The notes beneath the pieces are model-generated. The model saw only the letters and a list, made by a program, of their open reading frames with translations. It did no database searches and was not told the origin of the DNA. A DNA stretch of 64,000 nt, from the IMG/VR virus record IMGVR_UViG_3300009104_001210, positions 1-64,000 of that record; one strand, written 5' to 3'. How positions within the stretch are numbered: the first letter of the stretch is position 1; each line of letters starts with the position of its first letter. The translations under genes were made by a program, and so were the position numbers. Shown here piece by piece: positions 15,009 through 44,272 of the stretch.

Positions 15009-15096
15009 ACGATTGATTACTAAAATAAAATTAGAAATAAGATATCGTAAAAAAATTAAAGAACTTAAAAAAAGAGATCCTTTTATATACAAATAA
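14992..15096 (+). CDS. Small basic peptide (34 aa) ending RDPFIYK; not in the ORF track
   Basis: AAGGAG at 14981-14986, ATG 14992. MIKLIKRLITKIKLEIRYRKKIKELKKRDPFIYK*. Stop TAA directly abuts ATG 15097. Confidence 0.75.
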   Translation: MIKLIKRLITKIKLEIRYRKKIKELKKRDPFIYK

Positions 15097-16332
15097 ATGA
15101 GTATTAGAGAAAAATATAAAAAGTTAAAAGGATCTAAGGTTTTTTGTATGATGCCCTGGATACATACACACGTGTGGCCAAGTGGTAAAGCATTTCCTTG
15201 TTGTATGTCGGATAGTACAGTTGAATATGGTAATTTAAATGATAATAGTTTAGCAGAGATTTGGAATGATGAAAAGTATAAACAACTTCGTTTAAATATG
15301 TTAAATGAAAAAGAAAGTTTAGAATGTAATAGATGTTATGAAATGGAGAAATCCAATGTGTGGACTTTACGAAAAATGGTAAATCAGACATATGATAAGC
15401 ATTGGGATAGAGTAGAGACAACACAAGATGATGGTACGGTAGAAGAAGTAAATATGGGATATATGGATATTAGAGTTTCTAATATATGTAATTTCAGATG
15501 TAGAACTTGTGGTCCAGAGTTGAGTAGTGCTTGGCATGAAGATCATATTAAACTTTATGGAGAAAAACCACAATGGCCTAAGATAATGAATATAGCAAAT
15601 AATGAAAGGTTTTGGAAAGATTTACAACCATTATTATTTACGGTAGAGGAAGCGTGTTGGGCAGGTGGAGAACCAATTATTACAGAAGAACATTATAAGA
15701 TATTAGATTTTTGGGTTGAAAATAACATGAAAGATGTTAGATTAAGATATACAACAAATTTTAGTAATCTTTATTTTAAGAAAAAAAGTATATTAGAGTA
15801 TTGGAATTCTTTTAATGATGTTAGAATAGCTGCAAGTCTTGATGCTATGGGTAAAAGAGGTGAGTTGATTAGGGCAGGAATGGAATGGAATGTTATAGAA
15901 GACAATCGTAGACAAATGATAAAAGAATGTCCTGATGTATATTTTGAAATAACACCTACAGTTAGTATTATGAATGTGTATCATCTACCAGACTTTCATA
16001 AGGATTGGGTAGATAAAGAACTTTTAGAACCAAATAATATAAGAGTAAATATATTAACACATCCAGAAGATTATAGAATACAAATTATACCAAAAGAAGA
16101 AAGAAAGAAATTTATAGACAAGTATAATGAACATATAAAATGGATTGATGATAATTTTGGTGAAGGTGTTGCTAAAAATGGATTTATGTCTATATTAGAT
16201 TTTTTAGAACAAGGTAATTATGAAGATAGTATATCTAATTTTATTAATAGAAATAAAGCATTAGATAAAACAAGAGAAGAATCTTTATTTGATGTTTGTA
16301 CTGAATTAAAGTTTTTAAAAGATTATGAATAG
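15097..16332 (+). CDS. Radical SAM protein with N-terminal twitch domain
   Basis: FCMMPW...GKAFPCC...ECNRCY; NICNFRCRTC; AGGEP; YTTN; SLDA. Confidence 0.9.
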   Translation: MSIREKYKKLKGSKVFCMMPWIHTHVWPSGKAFPCCMSDSTVEYGNLNDNSLAEIWNDEKYKQLRLNMLNEKESLECNRCYEMEKSNVWTLRKMVNQTYDKHWDRVETTQDDGTVEEVNMGYMDIRVSNICNFRCRTCGPELSSAWHEDHIKLYGEKPQWPKIMNIANNERFWKDLQPLLFTVEEACWAGGEPIITEEHYKILDFWVENNMKDVRLRYTTNFSNLYFKKKSILEYWNSFNDVRIAASLDAMGKRGELIRAGMEWNVIEDNRRQMIKECPDVYFEITPTVSIMNVYHLPDFHKDWVDKELLEPNNIRVNILTHPEDYRIQIIPKEERKKFIDKYNEHIKWIDDNFGEGVAKNGFMSILDFLEQGNYEDSISNFINRNKALDKTREESLFDVCTELKFLKDYE

Positions 16333-17047
16333 AGAATTTATATTTTATAAGAATAAACACAAGGATAAAACTGCTATTTTATTTGCAAGTGGTCCAACCT
16401 TAGAATTATATAACTTTGATTCTTCTAAGGATTGGGTTAGAGTAGGGGTTAATTCTGTAATTTATAAAGAAGATTTAAAATTAGATTATTTTTTTGGTGG
16501 ACAAAATGTAAAGAGAGAAAGTTGGAATCATCCACACCATGATTTAGAAATTAAATCACCAATATTTAATCAGTTGGATAAAAGAAAAGATGAAATGGAA
16601 ATTTTTCTATTAAATAAAATAGTGTATGATATACAAAATAAACCAACGTGGGTAGATAAAGCTAATGATGAACTTTTTACAAATGAAGAAATTCAAATGT
16701 TAGATGCAATTTCTTTCGAATGTCATACGGAAAGAGGAGTATCAGCATTTCAAATTGATATAAATACTAATCCATTATATGATAGAAGAATTGTTTTTCC
16801 TGCATTACAATTTTTACTTTATACAGGAGTTAAAGAAATATATTTGGTTGGATGTGATTGTGGATATGGTGCTTCTTATTTAGAACCAAATAAACGATGG
16901 GATCATGATATAAAAAATAAAACAGAAGGAACTATTTCATTTTGGAAAGAATTTAAAGAGTTTGTTGATATAAATTTTAAAGATGTAAAAATAATATCTA
17001 TTAATCCAAAGGGATTAAAAGGAATGTTTCAGGATGTTTATGAATAA
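16325..17047 (+). CDS. DUF115/Maf (MptE-like) domain protein, putative sugar transferase
   Basis: KTAILFASGPTL, VGVNS, PALQFLLYTGVKEIYLVGCDC. Confidence 0.65.
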   Translation: MNREFIFYKNKHKDKTAILFASGPTLELYNFDSSKDWVRVGVNSVIYKEDLKLDYFFGGQNVKRESWNHPHHDLEIKSPIFNQLDKRKDEMEIFLLNKIVYDIQNKPTWVDKANDELFTNEEIQMLDAISFECHTERGVSAFQIDINTNPLYDRRIVFPALQFLLYTGVKEIYLVGCDCGYGASYLEPNKRWDHDIKNKTEGTISFWKEFKEFVDINFKDVKIISINPKGLKGMFQDVYE

Positions 17048-17666
17048 GTTAGTTACATTTGGAGATAGTTTTGTGGAACAATCTGTTCATACAGAACCAT
17101 TGACCTGGTTAGATTATGTTTGTCAAGAAAATGATTTAATACTTGATTCACGTGGTGTAGGTGGTATTGGTCCTTGGAGCACAATAATGAATTTTTTAGA
17201 TTATGATAAAGATTTTGATATTTGTTTCTTTGCTTGGTCCACCTTACACAGAGAAATGGATATAAAAAAAGATTCGAATGATTATATTTTTTTAAAAGGA
17301 ATTGCTTTATTACAATGGTTTGATAGATTTTTACAAAAAAATTATTCAGATAAAAAAATTATTCATTTATATTCTTTTAAAGAATCAGATTATATTTCAG
17401 ATGACGGATCGGGCCATGAAGTGAATATTTTAAACAAGAACAATATACATTTTGATTTTTATCCTCATATATTTGAACAAGGAATAAATATAAAACCAGA
17501 ACTTTTAGAATTTTCGAAGTTATTAGATTTTAATTTTACAAAAGATATTAGATCATTACATATGGCACCTCAAGTTCATGAATCATTTGCTAAACAACTT
17601 AATAAAGTATTAAAAGACGAATCATTAAATAATGGTGATATGGTGGAGTTCAATCTTGAATATTAA
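17034..17666 (+). CDS. SGNH/GDSL-fold protein
   Basis: VTFGDSF block I, RGVGG oxyanion-type Gly, C-terminal ..LHM.PQVH. Confidence 0.55.
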   Translation: MFMNKLVTFGDSFVEQSVHTEPLTWLDYVCQENDLILDSRGVGGIGPWSTIMNFLDYDKDFDICFFAWSTLHREMDIKKDSNDYIFLKGIALLQWFDRFLQKNYSDKKIIHLYSFKESDYISDDGSGHEVNILNKNNIHFDFYPHIFEQGINIKPELLEFSKLLDFNFTKDIRSLHMAPQVHESFAKQLNKVLKDESLNNGDMVEFNLEY

Positions 17667-19083
17667 ATCTAAAACATTTTGTCCTTTTCCTTTTATGAAC
17701 CTCAATAATAATACTGATGGTTCTATGAAGATATGTTGTGCTCAAAATGAAAACTTACATTTAAAGAAAGATGATGGTTCTACATTCAATGTAGCAACTG
17801 ATGATATAGATGAAGTTTGGAATTCAAAGCACATGAGAGATATCAGAAAGAAACTTTTGAATGGAGAGCAAATACAAGAATGTAACGTGTGTTGGAATGT
17901 AGAAAATTTAGAAAAAACATATGGTGGTCATGAAGCACCAACAAGTACAAGATTAGATAGTATTAAAAGTTATATGGAAGAAGATGGTATTTATTCGCAT
18001 ATGAAAGAGGTGATAGAAAATAATATTAAGATGATGGATGATGATGGATTTATTAAAGATACACTTAATAGTTTAGAACTTAGATTAGGAAATCATTGTA
18101 ATTTAAAGTGTACAATGTGTTGGGGATATAGTAGTAGTAGAATTAACGCTGAACGATTAGACATAGTAAAAAAGTATGGATCAAAAATGCCAGTATGGTT
18201 ATATGATATGTGGTATCCAGCCGAGTATAATATATCCAAAATCAATATGATGTGGCATGAAAATCCGCAGTTTTTAGACAACTTTAAAAAAGTAGCACCT
18301 ACATTAAAAAGATTATATGTAACGGGTGGTGAACCAAGTATAATAAAAGCTAATGATGATATGATAAATCATTTGATTGAGATAGGTAATAAAGAATGTC
18401 ATGTATCATTTACTACTAATCTTACAACTTGGAATATGAACTTGTATGATAAACTATCTTTCTTTGATAAGAGTGAAGTTCAGGTTAGTATTGATGGTTA
18501 TAAAGAATCACAAGAGTATATAAGATATGGTTCAGCTTGGGAAGATATAGAAACAAATTTTAAAAGGTTGATAGAATTACCAGATAAAGTAAGAATTCAG
18601 ATATATAATGTATTTCAGATTTATAATATGTTTGAAACATATAAATTAATGAAATGGTTAGACTCTTTGAGTTTAAAAAGGCATGTATCTTTTTGGCCTA
18701 TATTAATAGATCAACCATTACATTTAAGATCAAATATAATTCCCTGGTCTTTAAGAGATAAAGCTATGGAATTATATAGAGAATTTTATGATTATTCAAC
18801 ATATGATAATAAATACTTAGACTTACATGGTGCAGCTAATAGAATTATTTCTTATTTAGAAAGTGATTGGGAAGCGCACGGTAGTTATGGAAAATATTGT
18901 CAAGGTGTAGAACAAACAGAAGTAAATCAAAGATATATGTTTTATCAATATACAAATTTTATGGATAGGTGTAGAGATACAGATTTTTTTAAAACTTTTA
19001 TTCAATTTGAAGAATTGAGAGAAGAATATGAAAACAGTCTTGATAAAAAAATAGTAACACCTAATTGGTGGATAGATGACTGA
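17656..19083 (+). CDS. Radical SAM protein with N-terminal twitch domain
   Basis: FCPFPF...GSMKICC...ECNVCW; NHCNLKCTMC; TGGEP; FTTN; SIDG. Probable TTG start at 17656 after GGAG (track start 17632). Confidence 0.9.
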   Translation: MNIKSKTFCPFPFMNLNNNTDGSMKICCAQNENLHLKKDDGSTFNVATDDIDEVWNSKHMRDIRKKLLNGEQIQECNVCWNVENLEKTYGGHEAPTSTRLDSIKSYMEEDGIYSHMKEVIENNIKMMDDDGFIKDTLNSLELRLGNHCNLKCTMCWGYSSSRINAERLDIVKKYGSKMPVWLYDMWYPAEYNISKINMMWHENPQFLDNFKKVAPTLKRLYVTGGEPSIIKANDDMINHLIEIGNKECHVSFTTNLTTWNMNLYDKLSFFDKSEVQVSIDGYKESQEYIRYGSAWEDIETNFKRLIELPDKVRIQIYNVFQIYNMFETYKLMKWLDSLSLKRHVSFWPILIDQPLHLRSNIIPWSLRDKAMELYREFYDYSTYDNKYLDLHGAANRIISYLESDWEAHGSYGKYCQGVEQTEVNQRYMFYQYTNFMDRCRDTDFFKTFIQFEELREEYENSLDKKIVTPNWWIDD

Positions 19084-20110
19084 GTTATTAAAAATATTAC
19101 CAGGTGAAAATAAGTATATAAATGTAACTTGGCAAGTAAATGATTGGTGTAATTTTAGATGTTCTTATTGTAATGAGGGTAATTGGGGTGGTAACAATTT
19201 AAATAAAGATACAGATAAGTACATAGAGTTTTTAGATTCTTTGATATCAAAATATCAATCATTTGGTTATGAGTCTTTTAAATTCTTTTTTTCGGGAGGA
19301 GAACCAACATATTGGAAATCATTAATACCAATAGCAAAATTTTTACATAAAAAATGTGATAAACCATTATTAGCTATAAATACAAATTTAAGCAATCCTT
19401 TGAGTTGGTGGTTAGATAATTATTATTACTTTCAAGATGTTGTAGCTAGTTATCATATTGAATATATTAAATACAATAAGTATATTAAGAATGCTAAGTT
19501 TTTACAAGATAGAGTAAATTATTTAGCATTGAGAATTATGATGGAAGAAAGTAGGTTTCAAGAGTGTATTGATATTGGTAGAAAGATGTATAGCGACATG
19601 GATAATTGTGTTGTAGAATGGGTCCCACTACTTAAAGATTTATCAGTAGATGCAGAAATGTGGGATTATGACGAAGAATGGAAAAATGATTTTTTCAAAA
19701 AGACGGATGGTTATATGAGAAAATGGGGAAAAGTAAATGAAAGACGAAAGTTTAAACCTGCTTATAGTTTAGAGGTTTGGAGTGATGGTAAAATTAGACC
19801 TGTAAACTCTAATAGATTATCAGCAGAGAAGTTAACTAATTTTCAAGGATGGACTTGTTTTTTAAATGATGCTATTTTTATAAATACAAGGGGTGATGTT
19901 AGCGCTGGTAGTTGTGGTGTTAGTGATATATTTACTAATATAAACACATGGAAACAAGAAGATTTAGAAAATTTAGGAAATCCTGTTATTTGTCCAAAGA
20001 ATCATTGTACTTGTGGTACGGATGTAATAATACCAAAAATAAATCCAAAAGTTTATAAAGATGTAGGAGATTATAAGATTATTAAAAAGGAAAATATAAA
20101 TGCAACCTAA
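19076..20110 (+). CDS. Radical SAM protein with C-terminal twitch-like Cys cluster
   Basis: DWCNFRCSYC; SGGEPT; NTN; ASYH; C-terminal WTCF...SCG...ICPKNHCTCGTD. Confidence 0.88.
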   Translation: MTELLKILPGENKYINVTWQVNDWCNFRCSYCNEGNWGGNNLNKDTDKYIEFLDSLISKYQSFGYESFKFFFSGGEPTYWKSLIPIAKFLHKKCDKPLLAINTNLSNPLSWWLDNYYYFQDVVASYHIEYIKYNKYIKNAKFLQDRVNYLALRIMMEESRFQECIDIGRKMYSDMDNCVVEWVPLLKDLSVDAEMWDYDEEWKNDFFKKTDGYMRKWGKVNERRKFKPAYSLEVWSDGKIRPVNSNRLSAEKLTNFQGWTCFLNDAIFINTRGDVSAGSCGVSDIFTNINTWKQEDLENLGNPVICPKNHCTCGTDVIIPKINPKVYKDVGDYKIIKKENINAT

Positions 20111-22331
20111 GATAGCAGTTTGTATGTTGCCAGCTTGGTCTTTAGAGACACCACCATTGAGTCTTGGACTGTTAGCAGGTGCTTTAAAAACAAGAGATAG
20201 AGTTGCGAAACAATTTCATATTAACTTACTATCTGCTGAATATGTAGATGAAGAAGCTAGAGAAGAATTATGGGCACCTACGGGTCACTTCTTTTGGACT
20301 AATGATCATTCATTCAATGATAAAATTCTTCCTACTTATAAAGAATATTGGGATAGTTTGATAGATGAACTTAAAGATTATGATATAGTTACTTTTACAA
20401 CATATTTTTCTAATATAGTTGTTACTGATTATTTTGCTGAAAGATTATATAAGGCTAATCCAAAACTTCATATTTTTTATGGTGGACCATATTGTTGGAA
20501 TGCACCTAAAGGTGGACTTTGTATATCATCACCCGATGGTGAACCCGATAGGTATTGGATAAAATTATCATGTGATAATGAAGGAGAAATTGTTATTAAT
20601 GATTTGGTAGATTGTTATGAGAAAGGTATTAGTTATGAAACTGTAAAAGGAATATGGACATTTGGTTCAACTTCTAAAGATAGACATAAATTTACAGGTA
20701 TGAGAATACCAGAAAAAGAGTTAGATACAATACCAACGCCTATTTGGGATGGTGTAGATTTGGAAATTTACGCTAAACATCACTATTCAGGACATGCACA
20801 TTTACCATTACAAGGTTCACGTGGTTGTACTTATAAATGTACATTTTGTTCAGAGACAAGAATTTTTAGATTTAAGAAAGGTAGAAAGATTAAAGAAGAA
20901 ATTTTAGAACAAACAAGAAAATATGGAATTACTCATTTCTCATTTGTGGATTCTCTTGTTAATGGTTCTATGCCACAATTTAAAATATTAGTAAATGAAT
21001 TAGCAGAAGAGGTTGAAAAAGATCCAAAATTGAAAGATTTAAGTCTTGGTGGATATGCAAGAACCCATAAAGAAATGGATAGTAAATTGATGAGAAAGGC
21101 TGCTAAAGCAGGATTTAAATGGTTATCTATTGGAGTGGAAAGTGGAACGCCTAAAATACTTGAGGTTATAGAGAAAAGACAAACAGTTGAGGGAATCGAA
21201 CAATTGTGGAAAGCTTGTTGGAGACACGGAATACGTATGGATGCTAATTGGATATCAGGCTATCCAAGAGAAAATCATATTGATTGGATAATGAGTTTAC
21301 ATTTTTTATATAAGAATAAACATTATATACCCGTAGTAGCAGCAAATCAGTTTCCTGCAGGAGTAACTCCAGGTACAGCACTTGATCAATATAGAGATGT
21401 ATTTAATATTTCACCATTAGGAAATATATTTTATGATTGGATTAGTAATGATGTAAAAAATACTTATGTTAATAGATTTTTAAGAGTGAAGTTATGTCAT
21501 ATGTTTTTAGAAATATGGAAAATTTACTATTCGGGATTTTGGACTGTAAGAGAGAATATTAAACACATAAAATTTAAAGATCCTAAATCAATGTTTAATA
21601 AAGAACAGTATCAAGAATGGGATCAAAGAGCAAATGGAACATTTTGGCAACAGAGACATAATTGGCATGGAAATAGAGAACAATTTAAGATTAGAAACTT
21701 AAATTATAATGTACCATATTTAGAATTTGCTAATAAAGCTGATACAGGAGAATACGATGCTTCAGTTAGTATTGAAGATACTATAAAAATACAAACAAGA
21801 AACGAAATAAGAGTTTGGTGTTGGCTAATGTATCAGATAGCCGGACCATTTGATATTGAAGTGGAGTTTGATGAAGATTATAGTGAACGAAATATAGATG
21901 GTGCTAGAATGATTAGTAAATTTAAATTTCAATCAGAAATGGATGGTAGTTATAGATTATCAATAGATAATAAATTGACAATAGATAAAAGAGCAAAAAG
22001 AACTATTCATATACAATTACCTATAGAATTAAAACATAGTGATAAAGAAATGTGGAAAAAAAGAAAAAAACAAATAGCGAGAAGATTTCATGAAGATGAA
22101 GAACCTTTACATATAGGTGATCATTTAAAAATTAATAAGGATGGTACTATGGTAACTTTTTATGATATTAGTTTTCATGATAAGTATCACGATGTTGGAA
22201 ATATGAATGATGAGTATGAAGACGAAGATTATTTTCGGAAAAAATATGGAGTACCAAATTATCTTGATGCATTAGATATAGAAAAATATAAACTTAATTT
22301 AAAAAGAACTTTTATGACAGGAAAACATTAA
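20100..22331 (+). CDS. B12-binding radical SAM protein with long C-terminal extension
   Basis: PPLSLGLLAG, YGGP, SRGCTYKCTFC, SIGVESG, WISGYPRE. Confidence 0.85.
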   Translation: MQPKIAVCMLPAWSLETPPLSLGLLAGALKTRDRVAKQFHINLLSAEYVDEEAREELWAPTGHFFWTNDHSFNDKILPTYKEYWDSLIDELKDYDIVTFTTYFSNIVVTDYFAERLYKANPKLHIFYGGPYCWNAPKGGLCISSPDGEPDRYWIKLSCDNEGEIVINDLVDCYEKGISYETVKGIWTFGSTSKDRHKFTGMRIPEKELDTIPTPIWDGVDLEIYAKHHYSGHAHLPLQGSRGCTYKCTFCSETRIFRFKKGRKIKEEILEQTRKYGITHFSFVDSLVNGSMPQFKILVNELAEEVEKDPKLKDLSLGGYARTHKEMDSKLMRKAAKAGFKWLSIGVESGTPKILEVIEKRQTVEGIEQLWKACWRHGIRMDANWISGYPRENHIDWIMSLHFLYKNKHYIPVVAANQFPAGVTPGTALDQYRDVFNISPLGNIFYDWISNDVKNTYVNRFLRVKLCHMFLEIWKIYYSGFWTVRENIKHIKFKDPKSMFNKEQYQEWDQRANGTFWQQRHNWHGNREQFKIRNLNYNVPYLEFANKADTGEYDASVSIEDTIKIQTRNEIRVWCWLMYQIAGPFDIEVEFDEDYSERNIDGARMISKFKFQSEMDGSYRLSIDNKLTIDKRAKRTIHIQLPIELKHSDKEMWKKRKKQIARRFHEDEEPLHIGDHLKINKDGTMVTFYDISFHDKYHDVGNMNDEYEDEDYFRKKYGVPNYLDALDIEKYKLNLKRTFMTGKH

Positions 22332-23599
22332 TGGAAGATTTAAAATATTTTTGTTCACATCTTTTCACTTCTTTAAGTTTTGATCAAAGAGGTCGAGTTA
22401 GGGTATGTTGTAATAATTATGAAATACCAAAAGATGAGAATGGGAAACCAATATTAGTTACAGACGAAGATTTTAGTATGAAAAAAGCTTTTGCGAGTGA
22501 TGTTCATATGAGAATTAGAAAAAATATATTAGCAAATAAACAAGATCCTGGTTGTATTAGATGTTGGCAAACAGAAGATAATGGAGCAGAGAGTTATAGA
22601 ACTATTTGGAATAATACTTTAGCAAGTGGGTTTTATAAAGATATAATGCTAGAGTCTGTAAATTCAGATGGTTACATTGATAATCCATATGTTACTTTTT
22701 TAGATTTTACTCTTGGTAATAAGTGTAATTTAATATGTAGAATGTGTAATGTAGATAATTCACATATATGGGAAAAAGAATCTAAATTACTTTATCCAAA
22801 TCAAGAATTAAATATACCTGAATCTACCGTATCTGTAAATGAAGATTTTTTAAGTGATGAATTTTTTGCAACTAATTTAACGCATTTAAAGCAAGTTAAT
22901 TTTCTTGGTGGTGAACCATTAATTATACAAGAACATATTGATTTTTTGAAACAATGTATTAAATTTGATATAAGTCAAAATATAGTATTATTTTATACAA
23001 CAAATTTAACAACAGTAAAAGATGAGTTATTTGATTTGTGGGAAGAATTTAGACACATTTATCTTGGTGTGAGTATAGATGGTTATAAAGAAGTAGATGA
23101 TTATATTAGATACCCATCTAAGTGGGCAAAGTTAGAAAAGAATATAAAGAAAGTTTCTAAATGGAAAAAAGATCTTAGTATGGACTTACAGATTCACGCA
23201 ACATTTCAAGTATTAAATGTTTTAAACTATGATAAGTTGTTAGAGTGGGTATATTCATTGGGTGATTTAGGTTTTTGGAGAATACCATTTGCTAATTGGG
23301 TAACATATCCTTCTTGGTATGATTGTAGAATATTACCTGATGATTTAAAAGATATTGCTGTAGAGAGAGTAAATAAATTTCTTGATAGTAAAAAAGATGT
23401 TAAGTGGGATGTAGGTGAAGAACAATGGTTAGGTATTTTGAAAAGTAATTTAGTAACTTTAAAAGATGAGTTACCTGAAACAGAACAATATGATGCTATT
23501 GCTAGATTTAAAATTTATACAAAAAAATTGGATATGAATAGAAAACAACATATAAGTAATTATATTCCTGAATTAGAGTATTTTGTTTATGAGTCTTAA
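22331..23599 (+). CDS. Radical SAM protein with N-terminal twitch domain
   Basis: FCSHLF...RVRVCC...GCIRCW; NKCNLICRMC; LGGEP; YTTN; SIDG. Confidence 0.9.
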   Translation: MEDLKYFCSHLFTSLSFDQRGRVRVCCNNYEIPKDENGKPILVTDEDFSMKKAFASDVHMRIRKNILANKQDPGCIRCWQTEDNGAESYRTIWNNTLASGFYKDIMLESVNSDGYIDNPYVTFLDFTLGNKCNLICRMCNVDNSHIWEKESKLLYPNQELNIPESTVSVNEDFLSDEFFATNLTHLKQVNFLGGEPLIIQEHIDFLKQCIKFDISQNIVLFYTTNLTTVKDELFDLWEEFRHIYLGVSIDGYKEVDDYIRYPSKWAKLEKNIKKVSKWKKDLSMDLQIHATFQVLNVLNYDKLLEWVYSLGDLGFWRIPFANWVTYPSWYDCRILPDDLKDIAVERVNKFLDSKKDVKWDVGEEQWLGILKSNLVTLKDELPETEQYDAIARFKIYTKKLDMNRKQHISNYIPELEYFVYES

Positions 23600-37294: not shown

Positions 37295-37958
37295 TTCACC
37301 CGTTCCGTTTATATATGTAGATAATTTTTTAGATGAAAAAACTTGTTTAGAGTTACATAATGAATGTTTACAAGCACCTAAAGGTGGGTGGACATTATTC
37401 AGTAGAGCAGGTTCTGCTATGGAAGAATATAATGATTTATTTTATACAAAAACAGCACATAAAATAACTTATGATTTATTACATAGTGGAGAATTTCTTT
37501 ATGAGTTAGAACAACTCACAGGTATTGTAGGATTAATGCCTGATCCACATTTAGTTGGTGCTGGTTTTAGTAGATTTAGAAAAGGTAAAGATTTGAAAAT
37601 CCATCATGATTTTAATTGGAACGATAGACTAAGATTACATAGAAAATTAACTTGTTTTTTATTCTTGAATCCAGATTGGAAAGAAACTTGGGGTGGTCAT
37701 CAACAATATTGGGAATCAAGAGATGGTGAGATGATTGATGAAGTAGCACCAATGTTTAATAGGTTTATTATGTTTGAAAATAAAAAAGAATCACCATACC
37801 ATTCAGTAAGAAAATTAACTTGTCCTAAAAATGAAATAAGAACTGCATTGAGGGTTTTTTATTATGTTAGTTCAAGTGAATATGATGAAAATGATCCACC
37901 ACATAGAAGTATTTATGATTCTGATGAATATACACATACGAGGTTATATGATGAATAA
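37266..37958 (+). CDS. 2OG-Fe(II) oxygenase
   Basis: IHHDFN (HxD), WGG.Q.W, YHSV, R.ALRVFYY. Confidence 0.85.
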   Translation: MIYKKREWDNSPVPFIYVDNFLDEKTCLELHNECLQAPKGGWTLFSRAGSAMEEYNDLFYTKTAHKITYDLLHSGEFLYELEQLTGIVGLMPDPHLVGAGFSRFRKGKDLKIHHDFNWNDRLRLHRKLTCFLFLNPDWKETWGGHQQYWESRDGEMIDEVAPMFNRFIMFENKKESPYHSVRKLTCPKNEIRTALRVFYYVSSSEYDENDPPHRSIYDSDEYTHTRLYDE

Positions 37959-38469
37959 ATGGAAAATAGGTAATATAGAACCATTTTGGGATGAACAATA
38001 TAAAGATTTAAATTATTATAAAGTTGTTCATAATAACCCTCAAGATATGGAAAGATGGAGAAAACAAGGATATACACATCCTGATGAACTTTTTACAGGT
38101 GCTATGTGTCCTCATGGTGAGAAACATCCAACTTGGAGTCATAAAATAGTAGAGTGGTTAGAAAAAGATTTTGATTGGAAAGATATAGGATTAAATTATT
38201 ATAGAATGGAAACAGGAGTTATATTACCATCACATGCGGATTTGTATCAAGAATATACAAAAAAATTTAATTTAACTCAACGTCAAGCAGAACGAGTTCT
38301 TCTTTTGTTAGAAGATTGGAAACCTGGTCATTATCTTGAAGTAGATGGTGAAGCAGTAGTAAATTGGGAAGCAGGTGATTGGGTGTGGTGGCCAGGTGAT
38401 ATGGAACACGCTGCGTCAAATATAGGACCTGAGTATAGATATTCATTACAATTGACAGGACACAAATAA
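37948..38469 (+). CDS. Fe(II)-dependent oxygenase/cupin-fold protein
   Basis: LPSHADLY (HxD), MEHAASNIG, RYSLQLTG. GAGG RBS before ATG 37948. Confidence 0.72.
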   Translation: MMNKWKIGNIEPFWDEQYKDLNYYKVVHNNPQDMERWRKQGYTHPDELFTGAMCPHGEKHPTWSHKIVEWLEKDFDWKDIGLNYYRMETGVILPSHADLYQEYTKKFNLTQRQAERVLLLLEDWKPGHYLEVDGEAVVNWEAGDWVWWPGDMEHAASNIGPEYRYSLQLTGHK

Positions 38470-39845
38470 TGGAAGATTTTAAATTTTTATCAGTAGACAA
38501 TCTTTTTGAAGAGGTTAGAGATGAAGTTGTTCATATAAAGATGAAACATTTAGTAATTAGAACAGGAGAGTGGATTGATAAGGATGGAAACTATAAACCA
38601 GGTAATCATCCAAGTAAAAAAAGAGTTTCTGCGGTTGATGCTGAAATGTTTATTCATAATTGGTATAGTGCGGAAGATTTTGAGAAACAAGAAAATTGGG
38701 AATATGAACTTATGGAAGAAAGTATTCTTAAACATGGTTTGAAAGAACCTATTATGATTAGACCTAGATTTGATACAGGAGATTATGAAATGTGGGATGG
38801 GTCTCATCGTATGGTAACTATAAAACATATTTTATTAACAAGACATCCTGAAGTTGATATTAATGAAGTAGAAATACCTTGTATAGAGAGAGAAACTTTT
38901 GAAGATCAACTTGACGAATATTATAAAGTAAAAGATAGAGCTAAAGAATTTGAAAAGACTATAGATTTTGGGATGGAACGATATAAAGGAGCTACAGCAT
39001 TTCCAGATGTGGAAGTTAATGAATTTTGGAAAACTATTAATAAAGAAATAGATATTAGTTATATTTTTTCATTGACAAGTTTATCACAAGCATTTTGTAA
39101 CGTATTTCATAAGTACATTAAAGCATCTAAATTAAATAAATTAAAAGGGTTGGATGATTATAAATATAAATCTTATACTAATGGAACAAGTCAAGCATTT
39201 GATTCATTTTGGATGAGACATAAAGATAAAAGATTTAAATGTTTTAAAGGGGAGTTCTTTTATCATAAAGCAAATTGGAGAAAATATTATAGGTGGGATT
39301 ATATAGAAGATACGGGTGTTAGTTCTAATGATGCAGTAGTTATTAGTTTCCCATTTAGTGATTATTGTAAAATACACCCTAAAATGATAGAAGTGTTAGA
39401 TAAGTGTGAAGAGTTAAAAGTTCCTGTTTTGATTGATTGTGCTTGGTATTTAATTGCAAAAAATATAAAATTTGATTTTTCAAAATATACTTGTATTGAA
39501 GATATAACTTTTAGTTTGAGTAAGGGATTTTATGGCGCACCTAAATTGAGAGCAGGTATTAGATATTCAAGAAATTATTACGATGATAATATTAATATTA
39601 TGAATGAATGGAAACAATATAATTATCTATCAGCATATATTGGTATTAAATTATTAGAAGAGTTTGAACCAGATTTTGCTTGGACAAAACGGGGTGAAGA
39701 ATATAAAAGATATTGTAAATCTAATAATTTTGAAGAAACTGATTGTGTTGGATTTGTTTTTGGTGGAGATGAATATAAAGAATTAAATAGAGGTACGGAA
39801 GTAAATAGATTGTGCATTGTTAACGACATTGGAGATAATTTTTGA
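38469..39845 (+). CDS. Fusion of a ParB/Srx-like N-terminal domain and a fold-type-I PLP-dependent enzyme
   Basis: ESILKHGLKEPIMI...YEMWDGSHR (ParB/Srx). TNGTSQAF, VLIDCAW, FSLSKGF (PLP Lys), RAGIR. Confidence 0.72.
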   Translation: MEDFKFLSVDNLFEEVRDEVVHIKMKHLVIRTGEWIDKDGNYKPGNHPSKKRVSAVDAEMFIHNWYSAEDFEKQENWEYELMEESILKHGLKEPIMIRPRFDTGDYEMWDGSHRMVTIKHILLTRHPEVDINEVEIPCIERETFEDQLDEYYKVKDRAKEFEKTIDFGMERYKGATAFPDVEVNEFWKTINKEIDISYIFSLTSLSQAFCNVFHKYIKASKLNKLKGLDDYKYKSYTNGTSQAFDSFWMRHKDKRFKCFKGEFFYHKANWRKYYRWDYIEDTGVSSNDAVVISFPFSDYCKIHPKMIEVLDKCEELKVPVLIDCAWYLIAKNIKFDFSKYTCIEDITFSLSKGFYGAPKLRAGIRYSRNYYDDNINIMNEWKQYNYLSAYIGIKLLEEFEPDFAWTKRGEEYKRYCKSNNFEETDCVGFVFGGDEYKELNRGTEVNRLCIVNDIGDNF

Positions 39846-40807
39846 ATATATTAGTTACAGGTGGTGCAGGATATCTTGGTTCAGTAATTGTTCCTTTGTT
39901 ATTAGATAAAGGTTATGATGTAACCGTATATGATAATTTGATGTATAATCAGTTAACATTGAGTGATTTATGTTATAAATCTAATTTTAAATTTGTATAT
40001 GGAGATGTTAGAGATTATAAAAAATTAAATGAGTATGTACAGAAAGCAGATGTGATAATACCATTGGCTGCGATAGTTGGTTTTCCTGCTTGTGAAAAAG
40101 ATAAACAATTAGCAGAAGAGGTAAATTATAATCAGATATATGATTTAATAACTAATACATCTAAAGAACAAACTATTATTTTTCCAAATACAAATAGTGG
40201 TTATGGAACTCGTTCAAGTGGTATATGTACGGAAGATCAAAAATTACAACCAATTAGTCATTATGGAATAACCAAATGTAATGCAGAAGATATATTATTA
40301 CAAAATGGTAATGCAATTATCTTTAGATTTGCTACGGTGTTTGGTGTATCACCAAGAATGAGATTAGATTTATTAGTTAATGAATTTGTTTATAAAGCAT
40401 TGACGGATAAATATATTACTATCTTTGAAAGAAAAGCAGTTCGTAACTATATTCATATCAGAGATGTAGCTTCAGTATTTGAATGGATGGTTGTTCTTCG
40501 TGATATACATAGAGGTGAGATATTCAATGTAGGATTATCAAACGCTAATATCAATAAACAACAATTAGCTGAAATGATTAAAAAATATATTTCAGATTTT
40601 GCTATTACTTATTCTGATTATTATGAGGATCCTGACAAAAGAGATTACATTGTAAGTAATGAAAAAGTAGAAAGCACAGGTTGGCTACCTAAATATACTT
40701 TACACGATGGTATAAAAGAATTAATAATGGCTTATCAAATAATAATAAATAATGATACAAGTCATTTTAGAAATGGATTTCCTTTAACATATGGGGCAGC
40801 ATTATGA
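39842..40807 (+). CDS. NAD-dependent epimerase/dehydratase (extended SDR)
   Basis: TGGAGYLGS, PLAAIVGFPAC, canonical YGITK, RFATVFG, RNYIHIRD. TTG start. Confidence 0.88.
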   Translation: MNILVTGGAGYLGSVIVPLLLDKGYDVTVYDNLMYNQLTLSDLCYKSNFKFVYGDVRDYKKLNEYVQKADVIIPLAAIVGFPACEKDKQLAEEVNYNQIYDLITNTSKEQTIIFPNTNSGYGTRSSGICTEDQKLQPISHYGITKCNAEDILLQNGNAIIFRFATVFGVSPRMRLDLLVNEFVYKALTDKYITIFERKAVRNYIHIRDVASVFEWMVVLRDIHRGEIFNVGLSNANINKQQLAEMIKKYISDFAITYSDYYEDPDKRDYIVSNEKVESTGWLPKYTLHDGIKELIMAYQIIINNDTSHFRNGFPLTYGAAL

Positions 40808-41712
40808 GAATATTAATAACAGGAGTAACAGGTTTAATAGGTTCTAATCTTTATAGACTATTAAAAGAAAATAATTATGAAGTAGATGGAATATCATCTA
40901 AAGATGGAGATTTAACATCACTTGATGTTTGTAAAGATTTGATACAAGGTTATGATACAATTGTTCATTGTGCAGCAAATACATCAAACGCTTTTGATAC
41001 AGAGAAATCACCATTGGTTCACGTTACACCAAATGTTGCTATGAATGCTAATGTGATGGATGCAGCTTATCATAGTGGAGTTAAAAAATTTATTTTTATT
41101 AGTAGTTCCACAATATATCCACCATCAGATGAAAGACCAGTAAAAGAAACTGATCATATTTTTGATGAACCATATCCTGCATATTTTCCTGTTGGGTGGA
41201 TGAAAAGATATGCAGAAGTATTATGTGATATGTATTCTAATCGTTTAGATAAAACTATGCAGTGTATAGTTGTTAGACCTGCGAATGTATTTGGACCAGG
41301 AGACAAATGGGATTTTGATAAATGTCATGTAACACCTGCTACAATTAGAAAAGTAGTTGATAAACACAATCCAATTAAAGTTTGGGGAGATGGTTCTGAA
41401 ATAAGAGATTTGATTTATGTAAATGATGTTGCAGAAGCACTTAAACTTATCATAGATAAAGTAGATAAGTATTCTATTTGGAATGTAGGTAGTAATACTG
41501 CTTATTCTGTAAATGATGTTTTAGATATGTGTATGGAAATAGAAAATTATGAAGCACCAATAGAATATGTTGGTGGTATGAAACCAATGATTCCTATAAG
41601 AAAAATAAATTCTAATAAGATGGGTGATGATCTTAAATGGGAATGTAAGTATACGTTGAAAGAGGGATTAGAAAAAACAATTAAATGGTATAAAGAAAAT
41701 TATGTTAAGTGA
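40804..41712 (+). CDS. NAD-dependent epimerase/reductase, GDP-L-fucose-synthase-like
   Basis: GVTGLIG, HCAA, FISSS, RPANVFGPGD, WGDGSEIRD. The YxxxK position reads VGWMK. Confidence 0.82.
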   Translation: MRILITGVTGLIGSNLYRLLKENNYEVDGISSKDGDLTSLDVCKDLIQGYDTIVHCAANTSNAFDTEKSPLVHVTPNVAMNANVMDAAYHSGVKKFIFISSSTIYPPSDERPVKETDHIFDEPYPAYFPVGWMKRYAEVLCDMYSNRLDKTMQCIVVRPANVFGPGDKWDFDKCHVTPATIRKVVDKHNPIKVWGDGSEIRDLIYVNDVAEALKLIIDKVDKYSIWNVGSNTAYSVNDVLDMCMEIENYEAPIEYVGGMKPMIPIRKINSNKMGDDLKWECKYTLKEGLEKTIKWYKENYVK

Positions 41713-43487: not shown

Positions 43488-44272
43488 ATGTAGTAGTTAT
43501 AGGAGATAGTTGTAATGATATTTTTATTTATGGAGACATAGAAAGAATAAGTCCAGAAGCACCTATACCAGTTTTTAAACCAACACATAAAGAATCAAAT
43601 GGTGGTATGGCAAAAAATGTTGTAAACAATGTAGAATCATTAGAAATGACTATCTATACAGTTACAAATGAAAATACAATTGTGAAAAAACGATATGTAG
43701 ATAATCGTTCAGGACAAATGGTATTAAGAGTTGATGAACATGATTATTGTGATAGAGTAGAAATAAAAAAATTACAAGGTATAAAAAATAATAAATTTAA
43801 ATCTTATGGGTTGGGTGGTAATATAGATAAAATTGATGCAATTATTATTTCAGATTATTGTAAAGGATTTTTAGAAGAAAGTGATATAGAACATATTTGT
43901 AAATACAATAAAAATGTATTCGTGGATACTAAAAAGAAACTCGGTAAGTGGATTAAAGACGCAGATTATATTAAAATAAATGAGTTAGAATATAAAAAGA
44001 ATTACGAGTTATTATCAGATAAAGGATTTAGAGATAAACTTATTGTTACATTAGGTAGTAAAGGTTGTAGATATAAAGGATTAGAATATCCAGTAAAAGA
44101 AGTTCCTGTAAGGGATGTAAGTGGAGCAGGGGATACATTTATTGCAGGATTAGTTCGTGGTTATTTAGATACCAATAACATATATGAAGCAATTAAGTTT
44201 GCACAGAAATGTACTACAGTAGTTGTACAGAAACATGGAGTTGCAACAGTTACATTAGAGGAGATTTTATGA
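43484..44272 (+). CDS. PfkB sugar kinase, HldE/RfaE domain I-like (heptose-7-phosphate kinase)
   Basis: RISPEAPIPV, GGMAKNV, IISDYCKG, VDTK, VTLGSKG, DVSGAGDTF. Confidence 0.88.
   Translation: MNVVVIGDSCNDIFIYGDIERISPEAPIPVFKPTHKESNGGMAKNVVNNVESLEMTIYTVTNENTIVKKRYVDNRSGQMVLRVDEHDYCDRVEIKKLQGIKNNKFKSYGLGGNIDKIDAIIISDYCKGFLEESDIEHICKYNKNVFVDTKKKLGKWIKDADYIKINELEYKKNYELLSDKGFRDKLIVTLGSKGCRYKGLEYPVKEVPVRDVSGAGDTFIAGLVRGYLDTNNIYEAIKFAQKCTTVVVQKHGVATVTLEEIL

What the first reader, a model, noticed from the sequence alone, without database searches (positions are those of the whole stretch)
38469..39845. ParB/Srx-like domain fused to a PLP enzyme: possible kinase-decarboxylase
Seen: an N-terminal domain with the DGxHR motif joined to a fold-type-I PLP domain (DCAW, SLSK). 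Established: ParB/Srx-fold proteins include the free-serine kinases SerK and SbnI, and CobD-type PLP enzymes decarboxylate phospho-threonine. Inference: the fusion may make an aminoalcohol phosphate (e.g. phosphoethanolamine or aminopropanol phosphate) as a glycan substituent or linker.
Basis: inference. Interest (0 to 1): 0.62.

Follow-up and report, generated by a model that had tools for sequence, protein, structure and literature searches.

The report
Phage ParB-fold domain fused to PLP enzyme
A marine T4-like phage carries a real, widespread gene that joins a nucleotide-binding ParB/sulfiredoxin-type domain to a compact vitamin-B6 (PLP) enzyme, a fusion I found described nowhere; what it makes is still open, and the "kinase-decarboxylase" idea is only one of several possibilities.

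Summary
ORF 38469-39845 (+, 458 aa) is intact. It has an N-terminal ParB/Srx-fold domain (DGSHR at aa 110-114) and a C-terminal fold-type-I, class I/II (PF00155-type) PLP domain with a full cofactor set (D323, K352, R361, R447).

Curated libraries miss both domains. Structure prediction and profile searches recover them.

The window is a 216-kb marine T4-like phage. The gene lies in a one-strand island rich in sugar, radical-SAM and 2OG-oxygenase genes, next to the tail fibres.

The PLP domain belongs to a large viral family (536 representatives), nearly all about 290 aa and standalone. The ParB fusion is one narrow but abundant marine lineage. The ParB domain has been lost or gained repeatedly, and it also exists alone.

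Other family members are fused to radical-SAM, PhyH or methyltransferase domains. That pattern suggests a transaminase step in a tailoring pathway.

Neither domain can be placed in a sub-family:
- SerK/SbnI tie with ParB, KorB and Srx.
- CobD/HisC tie with dozens of aminotransferases and lyases.
- The His of "DGxHR" is absent from 92 of 104 fused homologues.

The kinase-decarboxylase reading is therefore possible but weakly supported (about 0.1). This is a new variant of known kinds, of moderate interest.

The parts
38469..39845 (+). Whole gene: ParB/Srx-fold domain fused to a PF00155-type PLP domain, 458 aa plus stop
   Evidence: Start and stop overlap the neighbouring genes.
38469..38963 (+). 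N-terminal ParB/Srx-fold (ParB-CTPase-fold) domain, aa 1-165
   Evidence: Model pLDDT 83. VIA: KorB Z 6.6, PadC 6.5, Srx 6.0, pNOB8 ParB 5.8, SerK 5.5, SbnI 5.5. Profile against PDB: Noc E 0.0024, SbnI 0.39. PHROG ParB-like 1.9e-5. Pfam ParB_N only 0.019-0.1.
38505..38519 (+). Invariant FEEVR motif (aa 13-17) ahead of strand 1
   Evidence: Invariant in fused and standalone N-domain homologues.
38559..38702 (+). About 48-aa insertion in the loop after strand 1, found only in the 458-aa subgroup. It ends in A-E-D (aa 68-70), an acidic position that may match SbnI Glu20.
   Evidence: Alignment A1. Lowest pLDDT of the model. The equivalence to Glu20 is inferred from spacing only.
38736..38753 (+). 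Box I-like GLKEPI (aa 90-95)
   Evidence: G90, K92, E93 and P94 are invariant. Aligned to Noc and ParB Box I.
38796..38810 (+). Box II-like DGSHR (aa 110-114). D110, G111 and R114 are invariant; H113 is not.
   Evidence: Aligned to GERR of Noc/ParB and to D58-G-V-H-R of SbnI.
38931..38948 (+). Box III-position helix KDRAKE (aa 155-160). R157 and E160 are invariant. The E-N of canonical ParB Box III is absent.
38976..39842 (+). C-terminal compact fold-type-I PLP domain (aa 170-458), class I/II aminotransferase type
   Evidence: Foldseek PDB: HisC 3e-9, CobD 6.6e-7. VIA Z 18.3-19.6. ESM Atlas neighbours are viral 'aminotransferase class I/II' clusters. Profile A4 hits PDB aminotransferase 3if2 at E 7e-4. 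Relatives P0181 and P0228 pass the PF00155 cut-off.
39183..39194 (+). GTSQ (aa 239-242), in the position of the glycine-rich PLP-phosphate loop
   Evidence: G239 is conserved in >=90% of 116 family members. The role is inferred from the class I/II pattern.
39345..39362 (+). SFPFSD (aa 293-298), counterpart of the S-x-P-x-N-P-T-G strand. The usual Asn that bonds PLP O3' is Ser297 here.
   Evidence: Aligned to CSRPTNPTG of 3if2. S293, P295 and F296 are >=90% conserved.
39435..39446 (+). DCAW (aa 323-326): D323 is the pyridine-N aspartate; W326 is Tyr in most homologues
   Evidence: Aligned to IDNAY of 3if2. D323 is >=90% conserved.
39513..39524 (+). SLSK (aa 349-352): K352 is the Schiff-base lysine
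   Evidence: Aligned to FSLSK of 3if2 and SLSK of ACC synthase. SLSK is present in 120 of 121 homologues.
39549..39563 (+). RAGIR (aa 361-365): R361 is the PLP-phosphate arginine
   Evidence: Aligned to MRTGI and FRVG of solved aminotransferases. R361 and G363 are >=90% conserved.
39786..39809 (+). NRGTEVNR (aa 440-447): R447 is the carboxylate- or phosphate-binding arginine of the small domain; R441 is a second arginine conserved in most members
   Evidence: R447 is >=90% conserved across 116 members. NR[L/I]C is present in 121 of 121. The role is inferred from the class I/II pattern.
37864..38469 (+). Upstream, translationally coupled 201-aa gene, weakly Asp/Asn-beta-hydroxylase (cupin)-like
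   Evidence: Pfam Asp_Arg_Hydrox E 0.07 only. An unknown gene sits in the same position in L001. Asp_Arg_Hydrox genes flank the family member in phage Mosig.
34054..37958 (+). Conserved upstream neighbours: UDP-glucose dehydrogenase, B12-binding radical-SAM enzyme, 2OG-Fe(II) oxygenase
   Evidence: The same set is found in L001, L003 and L008.
39842..41712 (+). Two downstream NAD-dependent epimerase/dehydratase (SDR) genes
   Evidence: Conserved in L001, L003 and L008.
13479..23599 (+). Radical-SAM/SPASM paralogues. Relatives of four of them are fused to this PLP family in other viruses: 13479-15008, 15097-16332, 17632-19083, 22331-23599.
   Evidence: BLASTP 1e-8 to 1e-35 against the rSAM parts of P0195, P0223 and P0225.

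Best explanation
The gene encodes a two-domain tailoring enzyme of a marine T4-like phage. It sits in the phage's hypervariable island next to the tail fibres, which is rich in sugar, radical-SAM and 2OG-oxygenase genes.

The core is the C-terminal domain, a compact PLP enzyme of about 290 aa of the class I/II aminotransferase type. It keeps the Schiff-base lysine (K352), the pyridine aspartate (D323), the phosphate arginine (R361) and the anion-binding arginine (R447). It most likely acts as an aminotransferase: it would use an amino-acid donor to put an amine on a keto intermediate made by the neighbouring dehydrogenase, radical-SAM and oxygenase enzymes. That intermediate probably carries an anionic group (phosphate, carboxylate or nucleotide).

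The N-terminal domain is a ParB/sulfiredoxin-fold nucleotide-binding module. It has no DNA-binding or dimerisation domain. It is accessory and evolutionarily removable. It most likely binds an NTP and either phosphorylates the same intermediate or holds its phosphate or nucleotide handle for the PLP site.

Shown: the ORF, both folds, the cofactor residues, the family distribution and the conserved neighbourhood.

Inferred: the reaction type, the substrate, and any catalytic role of the N-domain.
For: Architecture and folds.

PLP residues, aligned residue by residue to solved aminotransferases and conserved in >=90% of 116 relatives.

PF00155 membership through relatives that pass the curated cut-off. 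ESM Atlas neighbours are labelled class I/II aminotransferase.

Family size: 536 representatives, nearly all standalone at about 290 aa.

Fusions of the same PLP module with rSAM-SPASM, PhyH and methyltransferase domains. Their rSAM parts are homologous to four paralogues in this same island. An alcohol-to-ketone-to-amine-to-N-methyl sequence is the usual logic for such a set of enzymes (own knowledge: BtrN/BtrS, DesV/DesVI).

Conserved neighbourhood of UGD, B12-rSAM, 2OG oxygenase and SDR in four loci, and a comparable island in the cultured pelagiphage Mosig.

N-domain:
- Charged residues E14, E15, R17, K26, K92, E93, D110, R114, R157 and E160 are invariant, also in standalone homologues.
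- It is conserved about as well as the PLP domain within subgroups: 0.88 vs 0.85 and 0.69 vs 0.75.
- D110 aligns with SbnI Asp58, which is needed for kinase activity (PMC9641203).
- The ParB fold is a general NTP-binding module often fused to enzymes (PMC12704722).
Against: No sub-family assignment is possible for either domain. VIA Z values are tied across aminotransferases, C-S lyases, ACC synthases, O2-dependent oxidases and HisC, and across ParB, KorB, Srx, SerK and SbnI.

The usual PLP-O3' Asn is Ser here.

The known nucleotide-sugar aminotransferases I am aware of are DegT-type, not PF00155-type (own knowledge), and a short DegT gene is already present in the island.

The N-domain is absent from closely related orthologues, so the pathway runs without it.

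A standalone N-domain exists in unrelated contexts, so its job need not concern the PLP substrate.

Domain docking could not be assessed (no verdict).

There is no RNA or biochemical evidence.
Confidence: 0.4

Rival explanations
1. The N-domain is a SerK/SbnI-like free Ser/Thr kinase. The PLP domain is a CobD/Cj1436-like phospho-amino-acid decarboxylase. Together they make ethanolamine phosphate or aminopropanol phosphate for a glycan substituent, for example an amide on glucuronic acid.
For: D110 aligns with the kinase-essential Asp58 of SbnI (PMC9641203). An acidic residue is kept in the loop after strand 1. There is no HTH domain. HisC and CobD are among the top Foldseek matches. Two conserved arginines (R441, R447) could hold a phosphate. 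UGD is a conserved neighbour, as in the C. jejuni Cj1441, Cj1436, Cj1437, Cj1438 and Cj1435 pathway (PMC12409886). SerK and SbnI both feed PLP enzymes (own knowledge).
Against: SerK and SbnI are not closer than other ParB-fold proteins. Their C-terminal substrate lobe is missing. His of DGxHR is missing in 92 of 104 fused homologues. CobD is tied with many non-decarboxylases, and decarboxylases are a small minority of PF00155 (own knowledge). No amidoligase or phosphatase was recognised in the island, although many ORFs remain unannotated. The rSAM, PhyH and MTase fusions of relatives are not explained by this model. The N-domain is dispensable.
Confidence: 0.1
2. A kinase-transaminase variant. 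The N-domain phosphorylates a hydroxy-ketone, or holds a phospho-ketone. The PLP domain transaminates it, as HisC or Cj1437 do, giving a phosphorylated amino-alcohol such as serinol phosphate.
For: HisC is the best Foldseek match. Transamination is the majority chemistry of PF00155 (own knowledge). There is a Cj1437 precedent next to a UGD (PMC12409886). The conserved arginine pair fits. The N-domain shares Asp58-equivalent D110 with the kinase SbnI.
Against: The same lack of sub-family resolution applies. DHAP-type substrates would not need a dedicated kinase. The N-domain is dispensable.
Confidence: 0.15
3. The N-domain is not catalytic. It is an NTP-dependent switch or an oligomerisation module that regulates a PLP transaminase, or it binds the nucleotide handle (CDP or UDP) of a nucleotide-sugar substrate.
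For: The ParB fold is a general NTP-binding switch, often fused to enzymes whose activity it may modulate (PMC12704722). By sequence the domain is closest to Noc and ParB N-domains. It is removable without loss of the gene. The island is dominated by nucleotide-sugar enzymes.
Against: Only one of the three Box II arginines is kept, and the Box III E-N is absent. Five invariant acidic residues look more like an active site than a binding site.
Confidence: 0.25
4. The protein acts on DNA or on a protein. Either the ParB-like domain targets the PLP domain to amino-acid-modified bases, as in thymidine hypermodification, or the island modifies tail-fibre proteins or peptides in a RiPP-like way and the PLP domain transaminates a peptide-borne ketone.
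For: The island is adjacent to the tail fibres. It contains many SPASM-rSAM, B12-rSAM, 2OG-oxygenase and methyltransferase-type partners, as RiPP clusters do. PLP plus rSAM pairs occur in phage thymidine hypermodification (own knowledge).
Against: No thymidylate-synthase or hydroxymethylase homologue was found in the complete 216-kb genome. The protein has no HTH or other DNA-binding domain. No precursor peptide was identified. Sugar-nucleotide enzymes and three GT7 glycosyltransferases dominate the island.
Confidence: 0.08

Closest known systems
Class I/II aminotransferase family (Pfam PF00155; for example HisC, aspartate aminotransferase, PatB/MalY C-S lyases, ACC synthase, CobD)
   Same: Fold-type-I architecture (VIA Z 18-19.6, about 280 aligned residues). 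Shared residues: the Schiff-base Lys in S-x-S-K, Asp in D-x-A-Y/W, R-x-G after the lysine, and the C-terminal Arg.
   Different: It is about 290 aa rather than 330-420 aa (target lengths). The PLP-O3' Asn is replaced by Ser297. The query itself is below the Pfam threshold. The family appears almost entirely viral.
Free serine kinases SerK (T. kodakarensis) and SbnI (Staphylococcus)
   Same: ParB/Srx fold (Z 5.5, rmsd 3.1-3.2 over 87-88 residues). The D-G-x-x-R motif, with the Asp aligned to SbnI Asp58. No DNA-clamp domains. Functional pairing with a PLP enzyme (own knowledge).
   Different: It lacks their second (C-terminal) lobe; they are 241-254 aa, against about 165 aa here. His of the motif is usually Asn. 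It is not closer to them than to ParB, KorB or Srx. In the known cases the PLP partner is a separate enzyme, fold type II in the case of SbnA (own knowledge); here it is fused and fold type I.
C. jejuni HS:2 capsule enzymes Cj1436 (serine-phosphate decarboxylase) and Cj1437 (DHAP transaminase)
   Same: PLP enzymes encoded near a UDP-glucose dehydrogenase in a glycan cluster. They make amino-alcohol phosphates used to amidate glucuronic acid (PMC12409886).
   Different: Their sequences could not be compared here. No kinase domain is reported for them in PMC12409886. No Cj1438-like amidoligase or Cj1435-like phosphatase was recognised in the phage island.
Canonical ParB/Noc/KorB CTP-dependent DNA clamps
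   Same: N-domain fold, with Box I (G-x-x-x-P) and one Box II arginine. These are the best sequence matches: Noc E 0.0024 and KorB Z 6.6.
   Different: No HTH and no C-terminal dimerisation domain. Two of the three Box II arginines and the Box III E-N are missing. An Asp precedes the Gly.
Small aminotransferase of Pelagibacter phage Mosig EXVC030M (Mosig_00079, 'putative aminotransferase')
   Same: It hits relatives of the query's PLP family (tblastn 9e-11 and 4e-10 with P0181 and P0140). It lies in a similar island next to the tail fibres, with Asp_Arg_Hydrox, rSAM, carbamoyltransferase and DegT-type genes.
   Different: It is 262 aa with no ParB domain. It is too distant to be hit by the query itself.

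Membership tests
Fold-type-I PLP enzymes, class I/II aminotransferase family (PF00155) | Overall fold: large alpha/beta domain plus C-terminal small domain | tested here: met
   AF2 model pLDDT 81. Foldseek E 3e-9 to HisC. VIA Z 18.3-19.6 over 262-298 residues.
Fold-type-I PLP enzymes, class I/II aminotransferase family (PF00155) | Schiff-base lysine in S-x-S-K, about 30 residues after the pyridine-N aspartate (D-x-A-Y) | tested here: met
   K352 and D323 align to the corresponding residues of 3if2 and ACC synthase. Both are >=90% conserved in 116 relatives.
Fold-type-I PLP enzymes, class I/II aminotransferase family (PF00155) | Phosphate-binding Arg after the lysine, and a C-terminal substrate-anion Arg | tested here: met
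   R361 is aligned to solved aminotransferases. R447 is >=90% conserved, but its equivalence to the class I Arg rests on motif position only.
Fold-type-I PLP enzymes, class I/II aminotransferase family (PF00155) | Asn that hydrogen-bonds PLP O3' in the N-P-T-G strand | tested here: not met
   The aligned residue is Ser297. I read this as a variant of the family rather than an exclusion.
Fold-type-I PLP enzymes, class I/II aminotransferase family (PF00155) | Score above the Pfam gathering cut-off | tested here: inconclusive
   The query gets no PF00155 hit. Relatives P0181 (27.9 bits) and P0228 (25.6 bits) pass the 19.7-bit cut-off.
ParB/Srx (ParB-CTPase) fold superfamily | Fold of the N-terminal domain | tested here: met
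   All matches with Z>=4.8 are ParB/Srx-fold proteins. The Foldseek list is the same set. ESM Atlas shape matches are ParB_N clusters.
ParB/Srx (ParB-CTPase) fold superfamily | Box I (G-x-x-x-P) and Box II G-x-x-R | tested here: met
   G90, P94, G111 and R114 are invariant and align to Noc and ParB.
Canonical ParB CTP-dependent DNA clamp | HTH DNA-binding domain, C-terminal dimerisation domain, full GERRxRA, Box III E-N-x-x-R | tested here: not met
   The ParB fold is followed directly by the PLP domain. Only one Box II arginine is kept, and there is no E-N.
Free serine kinases SerK/SbnI | Two-lobed structure: a ParB-like N-lobe plus a C-terminal lobe that closes the serine site | tested here: not met
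   The N-domain is about 165 aa and is followed by the PLP domain. SerK and SbnI chains are 241-254 aa, and only 87-88 residues align.
Free serine kinases SerK/SbnI | Catalytic acidic pair (SbnI Glu20 and Asp58) | tested here: inconclusive
   D110 aligns with Asp58 and is invariant. A Glu20 equivalent (E69 region, acidic in 14 of 15 sequences) is placed by spacing only.
Free serine kinases SerK/SbnI | Closer to SerK/SbnI than to other ParB-fold families | tested here: not met
   Z 5.5, against 6.0-6.6 for KorB, PadC and Srx. Profile E 0.39, against 0.0024 for Noc.
Free serine kinases SerK/SbnI | ATP- or ADP-dependent phosphorylation of free serine | not testable with these tools
   Needs an enzyme assay.
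CobD / Cj1436-type phospho-amino-acid decarboxylases | Specific similarity to CobD above other PF00155 members | tested here: not met
   CobD 1lc8 scores Foldseek E 6.6e-7, behind HisC and level with many others. It is not among the top 50 by VIA Z. Profile E is 0.65.
CobD / Cj1436-type phospho-amino-acid decarboxylases | Decarboxylation of O-phospho-Ser or O-phospho-Thr | not testable with these tools
   Needs an enzyme assay. I know of no sequence signature that separates decarboxylases from transaminases in this family.
DegT/DnrJ/EryC1 nucleotide-sugar aminotransferases (PF01041) | Sequence membership in PF01041 | tested here: not met
   No PF01041 hit for the query. A separate short DegT gene lies at 44209-44988.

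The most novel reading that the evidence does not exclude
The fusion is a self-contained phage module. A minimal ParB/Srx-fold domain, without the second lobe of SerK/SbnI, phosphorylates a small hydroxy compound (serine, threonine or a hydroxy-ketone). The fused compact PLP domain then converts the phospho-intermediate by decarboxylation or transamination into an amino-alcohol phosphate. That product decorates a glucuronic-acid-containing glycan made by the phage island. This would be the first kinase-PLP fusion of the ParB fold, and a new route to such substituents in the ocean's abundant myophages.
Probability: 0.2. Interest if true: 0.72.

Novelty: new variant of a known kind. Interest (0 to 1): 0.5.

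Why it matters
Both domains belong to well-known folds, but the combination has not been described as far as I could check.

- The 2025 survey of ParB-fold fusions (PMC12704722) does not mention PLP or aminotransferase partners in its text or in the supplements held.
- Pfam, NCBIfam and PHROGs do not recognise the protein as either family at curated thresholds.

The gene is abundant in marine metagenomes. It sits in the large hypervariable "host recognition" island of T4-like marine myophages. The chemistry of that island is essentially unknown, and it has been proposed to alter the host surface (PMC7029224).

Working out what this enzyme makes would give a handle on that chemistry. It would also test whether a minimal ParB fold can act as a small-molecule kinase or as a nucleotide-dependent regulator of a metabolic enzyme.

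The broader family is itself an uncharacterised enzyme class of about 290-aa viral PLP enzymes, with rSAM, PhyH and methyltransferase fusions.

Tried and rejected
- **Curated family scans.** Pfam, PHROGs and NCBIfam scans of the query gave only sub-threshold ParB, alliinase or valine-pyruvate-transaminase hints.
- **tblastn against phage genomes.** The query against 50,697 deposited phage genomes gave no match. Two more typical family members hit only Pelagibacter phage Mosig.
- **Profile A1 against PDB sequences.** Nothing at E<=10. The deeper profile A4 was needed.
- **Split-gene (Rosetta-stone) idea.** C-only loci L003 and L008 carry a small ParB-like DGHHR gene in the cluster. The query genome has its own copy of that small gene at 165057-165536. 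It is therefore a different ParB family, not the detached N-domain. I rejected it as evidence of a split.
- **P0288 in L009.** It looked like a standalone N-domain next to PLP fragments, but it is a frameshifted copy of the fused gene.
- **DNA-hypermodification idea.** No thymidylate-synthase or hydroxymethylase homologue was found in the complete genome.
- **PF02195 scan of the whole genome.** It found nothing, not even the query, so that tool is too insensitive for this domain.
- **Complex prediction of N-domain against C-domain.** No verdict (score 0.00). This is not evidence either way.
- **RNA evidence.** None is on record.
- **Literature search.** A search for this combination of island genes in phages found nothing.
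- **SbnI primary paper.** It is not held. The Glu20 and Asp58 statement comes second-hand from PMC9641203.


Full report
**Observation**

The ORF at 38469-39845 (+) is open and encodes 458 aa. Its ATG overlaps the stop codon of the upstream gene (TAATG, with an AGGA box 8 nt upstream). Its stop overlaps the TTG start of the downstream SDR gene (TTGA). It is therefore embedded in a translationally coupled operon.

- DGSHR, aa 110-114
- DCAW, aa 323-326
- SLSK, aa 349-352

The gene is real. A word-based search found 183 homologues down to E=0, all unnamed proteins from marine metagenomes. Near-identical DNA is present in marine or seawater runs of about 11 independent studies.

**What the window is**

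The window is the first 64 kb of a 216,422-bp IMG/VR virus record, rated 100% complete by CheckV. It has 31% GC, and almost all genes are on one strand.

It is a T4-like myophage:
- T4-type large terminase, gp20 portal and prohead protease.
- Nearest cultured relatives are Microcystis phage Mel-JY01 and Flavobacterium phage immuto, at 52-54% portal identity.

From about 5 kb to 56 kb, directly after tail-fibre-like genes (Peptidase_S74 and Hint domains), lies a one-strand island. It contains:
- three GT7 glycosyltransferases fused to LamG domains
- about nine radical-SAM/SPASM genes, two of them B12-binding
- an RmlC-like epimerase and several SDR epimerase/dehydratases
- two UDP-glucose dehydrogenase copies
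- a split TPP enzyme
- 2OG-Fe(II) oxygenases
- PfkB and AAA_33 kinases
- a short DegT gene and a carbamoyltransferase
- a GH108 endolysin at the end

This matches the "host recognition cluster" described for pelagimyophages and cyanomyophages (PMC7029224). A comparable island surrounds a distant member of the same PLP family in the cultured Pelagibacter phage Mosig.

**The C-terminal domain (aa about 170-458)**

The AlphaFold model, built from a 21-sequence alignment, has mean pLDDT 81.

- Foldseek against the PDB returns only fold-type-I class I/II PLP enzymes. T. maritima HisC is best at E 3e-9, and CobD scores 6.6e-7.
- Re-alignment with VIA gives Z 18.3-19.6 for C-S lyases, RohP/MppP oxidases, ACC synthases, aspartate aminotransferases and HisC. 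These are all within one Z unit. The fold is certain, but the sub-family is not resolved.
- A deeper profile of 116 relatives (A4) hits solved aminotransferases by sequence (3if2, E 7e-4). It aligns S293-x-P295 to the S-x-P-x-N-P-T-G strand, D323-x-A-W/Y to D-N-A-Y, S349-L-S-K352 to S-L-S-K, and R361-x-G to R-x-G.
- These positions and R447 are conserved in at least 90% of the 116 sequences.
- The one departure is Ser297 in place of the Asn that normally bonds PLP O3'.
- Two relatives pass the PF00155 gathering score. The ESM Atlas places the domain among viral clusters labelled class I/II aminotransferase.

**The N-terminal domain (aa 1-about 165)**

Modelled alone, it has pLDDT 83.

- All VIA matches with Z>=4.8 are ParB/Srx-fold proteins: KorB 6.6, PadC 6.5, plant Srx 6.0, pNOB8 ParB 5.8, SerK 5.5, SbnI 5.5 and human Srx 4.8. 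Foldseek lists the same set.
- By sequence the profile is closest to Noc (E 0.0024), with SbnI at 0.39.
- Invariant residues are F13-E-E-V-R17, K26, G90-x-K-E-P94 (Box I), D110-G-x-x-R114 (Box II position), I-P-C138, R157 and E160. They are also invariant in standalone homologues.
- Relative to canonical ParB, two of the three Box II arginines and the Box III E-N are missing, and there is no HTH or dimerisation domain.
- Relative to SerK and SbnI, the second lobe is missing.
- D110 aligns with SbnI Asp58. Together with Glu20, that residue is reported to be required for kinase activity (PMC9641203, citing Verstraete 2018).
- The His of "DGxHR" is not a family feature. 92 of 104 fused homologues read DGYNR.
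- The 458-aa subgroup carries an extra insertion of about 48 aa after strand 1.

**Distribution and evolution**

An exhaustive profile search found 536 representatives (at 50% identity) of the PLP family. Nearly all are standalone proteins of 280-310 aa. The ParB-fused form appears only as the query's own cluster.

Within that cluster the fused form is abundant, with dozens of 90%-identity clusters, some seen on 27 or more contigs.

A maximum-likelihood tree of C-domains puts the fused forms (458-aa and about 395-aa) and their closest C-only relatives in one clade (support 99/96). The C-only proteins are interleaved among the fused ones. The ParB domain has therefore been lost, or less likely gained, several times.

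The C-only genes are genuine. In L003-L005, L006-L007 and L008 the upstream gene abuts them.

True standalone N-domain proteins of 162-168 aa, with all invariant residues kept, exist on other phage contigs next to heme oxygenase and SPASM genes. No PLP gene is nearby.

I found no case of the two domains as separate adjacent genes. The one apparent case (L009) is a frameshifted copy. A small DGHHR ParB-like gene in the C-only clusters turned out to be a different family that the query genome also has elsewhere.

Within subgroups the N-domain is conserved about as well as the C-domain: 0.88 vs 0.85 and 0.69 vs 0.75. This argues against a decaying appendage.

**Functional clues**

1. The neighbourhood of UDP-glucose dehydrogenase, B12-rSAM, 2OG oxygenase and SDR is conserved around both fused and unfused forms.
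2. Distant members of the PLP family are fused to rSAM-SPASM domains (three representatives, in both orders), to a PhyH dioxygenase and to a SAM methyltransferase. The rSAM parts are homologous to four paralogues in this same island, at 1e-8 to 1e-35. From general knowledge of aminoglycoside and deoxysugar pathways (BtrN/BtrS, DesV/DesVI), an rSAM dehydrogenase, a PLP transaminase and an N-methyltransferase form the sequence alcohol, ketone, amine, methylamine. This favours a transaminase role.
3. The C. jejuni HS:2 capsule pathway pairs a UGD with PLP enzymes that make ethanolamine phosphate (Cj1436) and serinol phosphate (Cj1437) for amidation of glucuronic acid (PMC12409886).
4. The ParB fold is now regarded as a general NTP-binding module, with unpredictable nucleotide preference, that is often fused to enzymes (PMC12704722). 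That survey mentions no PLP partner in its text or in the supplements held.
5. A DNA-hypermodification role is unlikely. The complete genome has no thymidylate-synthase or hydroxymethylase homologue, and the protein has no DNA-binding domain.

**Verdict**

The architecture is confirmed, and as far as I could check it is undescribed.

My best reading (confidence about 0.4) has two parts:
- A PLP-dependent transaminase-type tailoring enzyme that works with the island's rSAM, oxygenase and dehydrogenase enzymes on an anionic keto intermediate.
- An accessory, removable ParB/Srx NTP-binding domain that phosphorylates that intermediate or holds it.

Probabilities for the alternatives:
- Its kinase-transaminase variant: about 0.15.
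- A purely regulatory or handle-binding N-domain: about 0.25.

An attempt to test docking of the two domains gave no verdict. Enzyme assays and a structure are needed to decide between these readings.

Noticed in passing
window 5210-56270 (+): A roughly 50-kb one-strand island next to the tail-fibre genes. It holds three GT7+LamG glycosyltransferases, about nine radical-SAM/SPASM genes (two B12-binding), an RmlC-like gene, SDRs, UGD, 2OG oxygenases, PfkB and AAA_33 kinases, a carbamoyltransferase and an endolysin. It is an unusually rSAM-rich version of the 'host recognition cluster' of marine myophages (PMC7029224). Its product is unknown.
   Followed up: partly
window 13479-15008, 15097-16332, 17632-19083, 22331-23599: Four paralogous radical-SAM proteins. 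In two of them a SPASM domain lies N-terminal to the rSAM core, which is an unusual order. Relatives of these proteins are fused to the small PLP family in other viruses.
   Followed up: partly
window 2007-2975 and 4029-5144: Two ORFs after the Peptidase_S74 tail-fibre-like gene carry weak Hint or homing-endonuclease-associated Hint matches. They may be intein-like or autoprocessing modules in fibre proteins.
   Followed up: no
window 33254-34087 and 34054-35331: Two adjacent UDP-glucose dehydrogenase genes. The first (277 aa) lacks the start of the NAD-binding domain, with its match beginning at profile position 64. It is either a truncated duplicate or a mis-called start.
   Followed up: no
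window 29557-30150 and 30135-30680: A TPP-dependent E1-like enzyme split into two small genes (E1_dh and Transket_pyr). The same split is conserved in L001. It may form a branched-chain sugar.
   Followed up: no
window 44209-44988: A short (259 aa) DegT-type gene covering only the N-terminal part of the profile, overlapping the PfkB gene. A 240-aa version is conserved in L001, so it may be a real short form rather than a pseudogene.
   Followed up: no
window 52977-56270: A 1097-aa protein with a cytidylyltransferase-like domain. The corresponding 1283-aa protein in L003 also carries a PolyA_pol domain.
   Followed up: no
G000 165057-165536 (outside the window); L003:14483-14890; L008:12573-12983: A second, small (135-160 aa) ParB-like protein family with DGHHR and a CxC motif. 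In genomes whose PLP gene lacks the ParB domain it lies inside the sugar island, just before the AAA_33 kinase. In the query genome it lies far away.
   Followed up: partly
L010:5570-6076; L011:3164-3652: Standalone 162-168-aa orthologues of the N-domain, on phage contigs next to heme oxygenase, Na/Ca-exchanger and SPASM genes. They end at the junction where the PLP domain starts in the fusion.
   Followed up: yes
L012 (MT647606.1, Pelagibacter phage Mosig, 49918-68595): The only deposited phage with a member of the small PLP family. That gene is flanked by Asp_Arg_Hydrox, FA-desaturase-like, FMN reductase, peroxiredoxin, TauD, MoaA-like rSAM, ArnB-like and carbamoyltransferase genes, next to the tail fibres.
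   Followed up: partly
window 32661-33257: A 198-aa protein made of MORN-variant repeats, sitting inside the sugar island.
   Followed up: no
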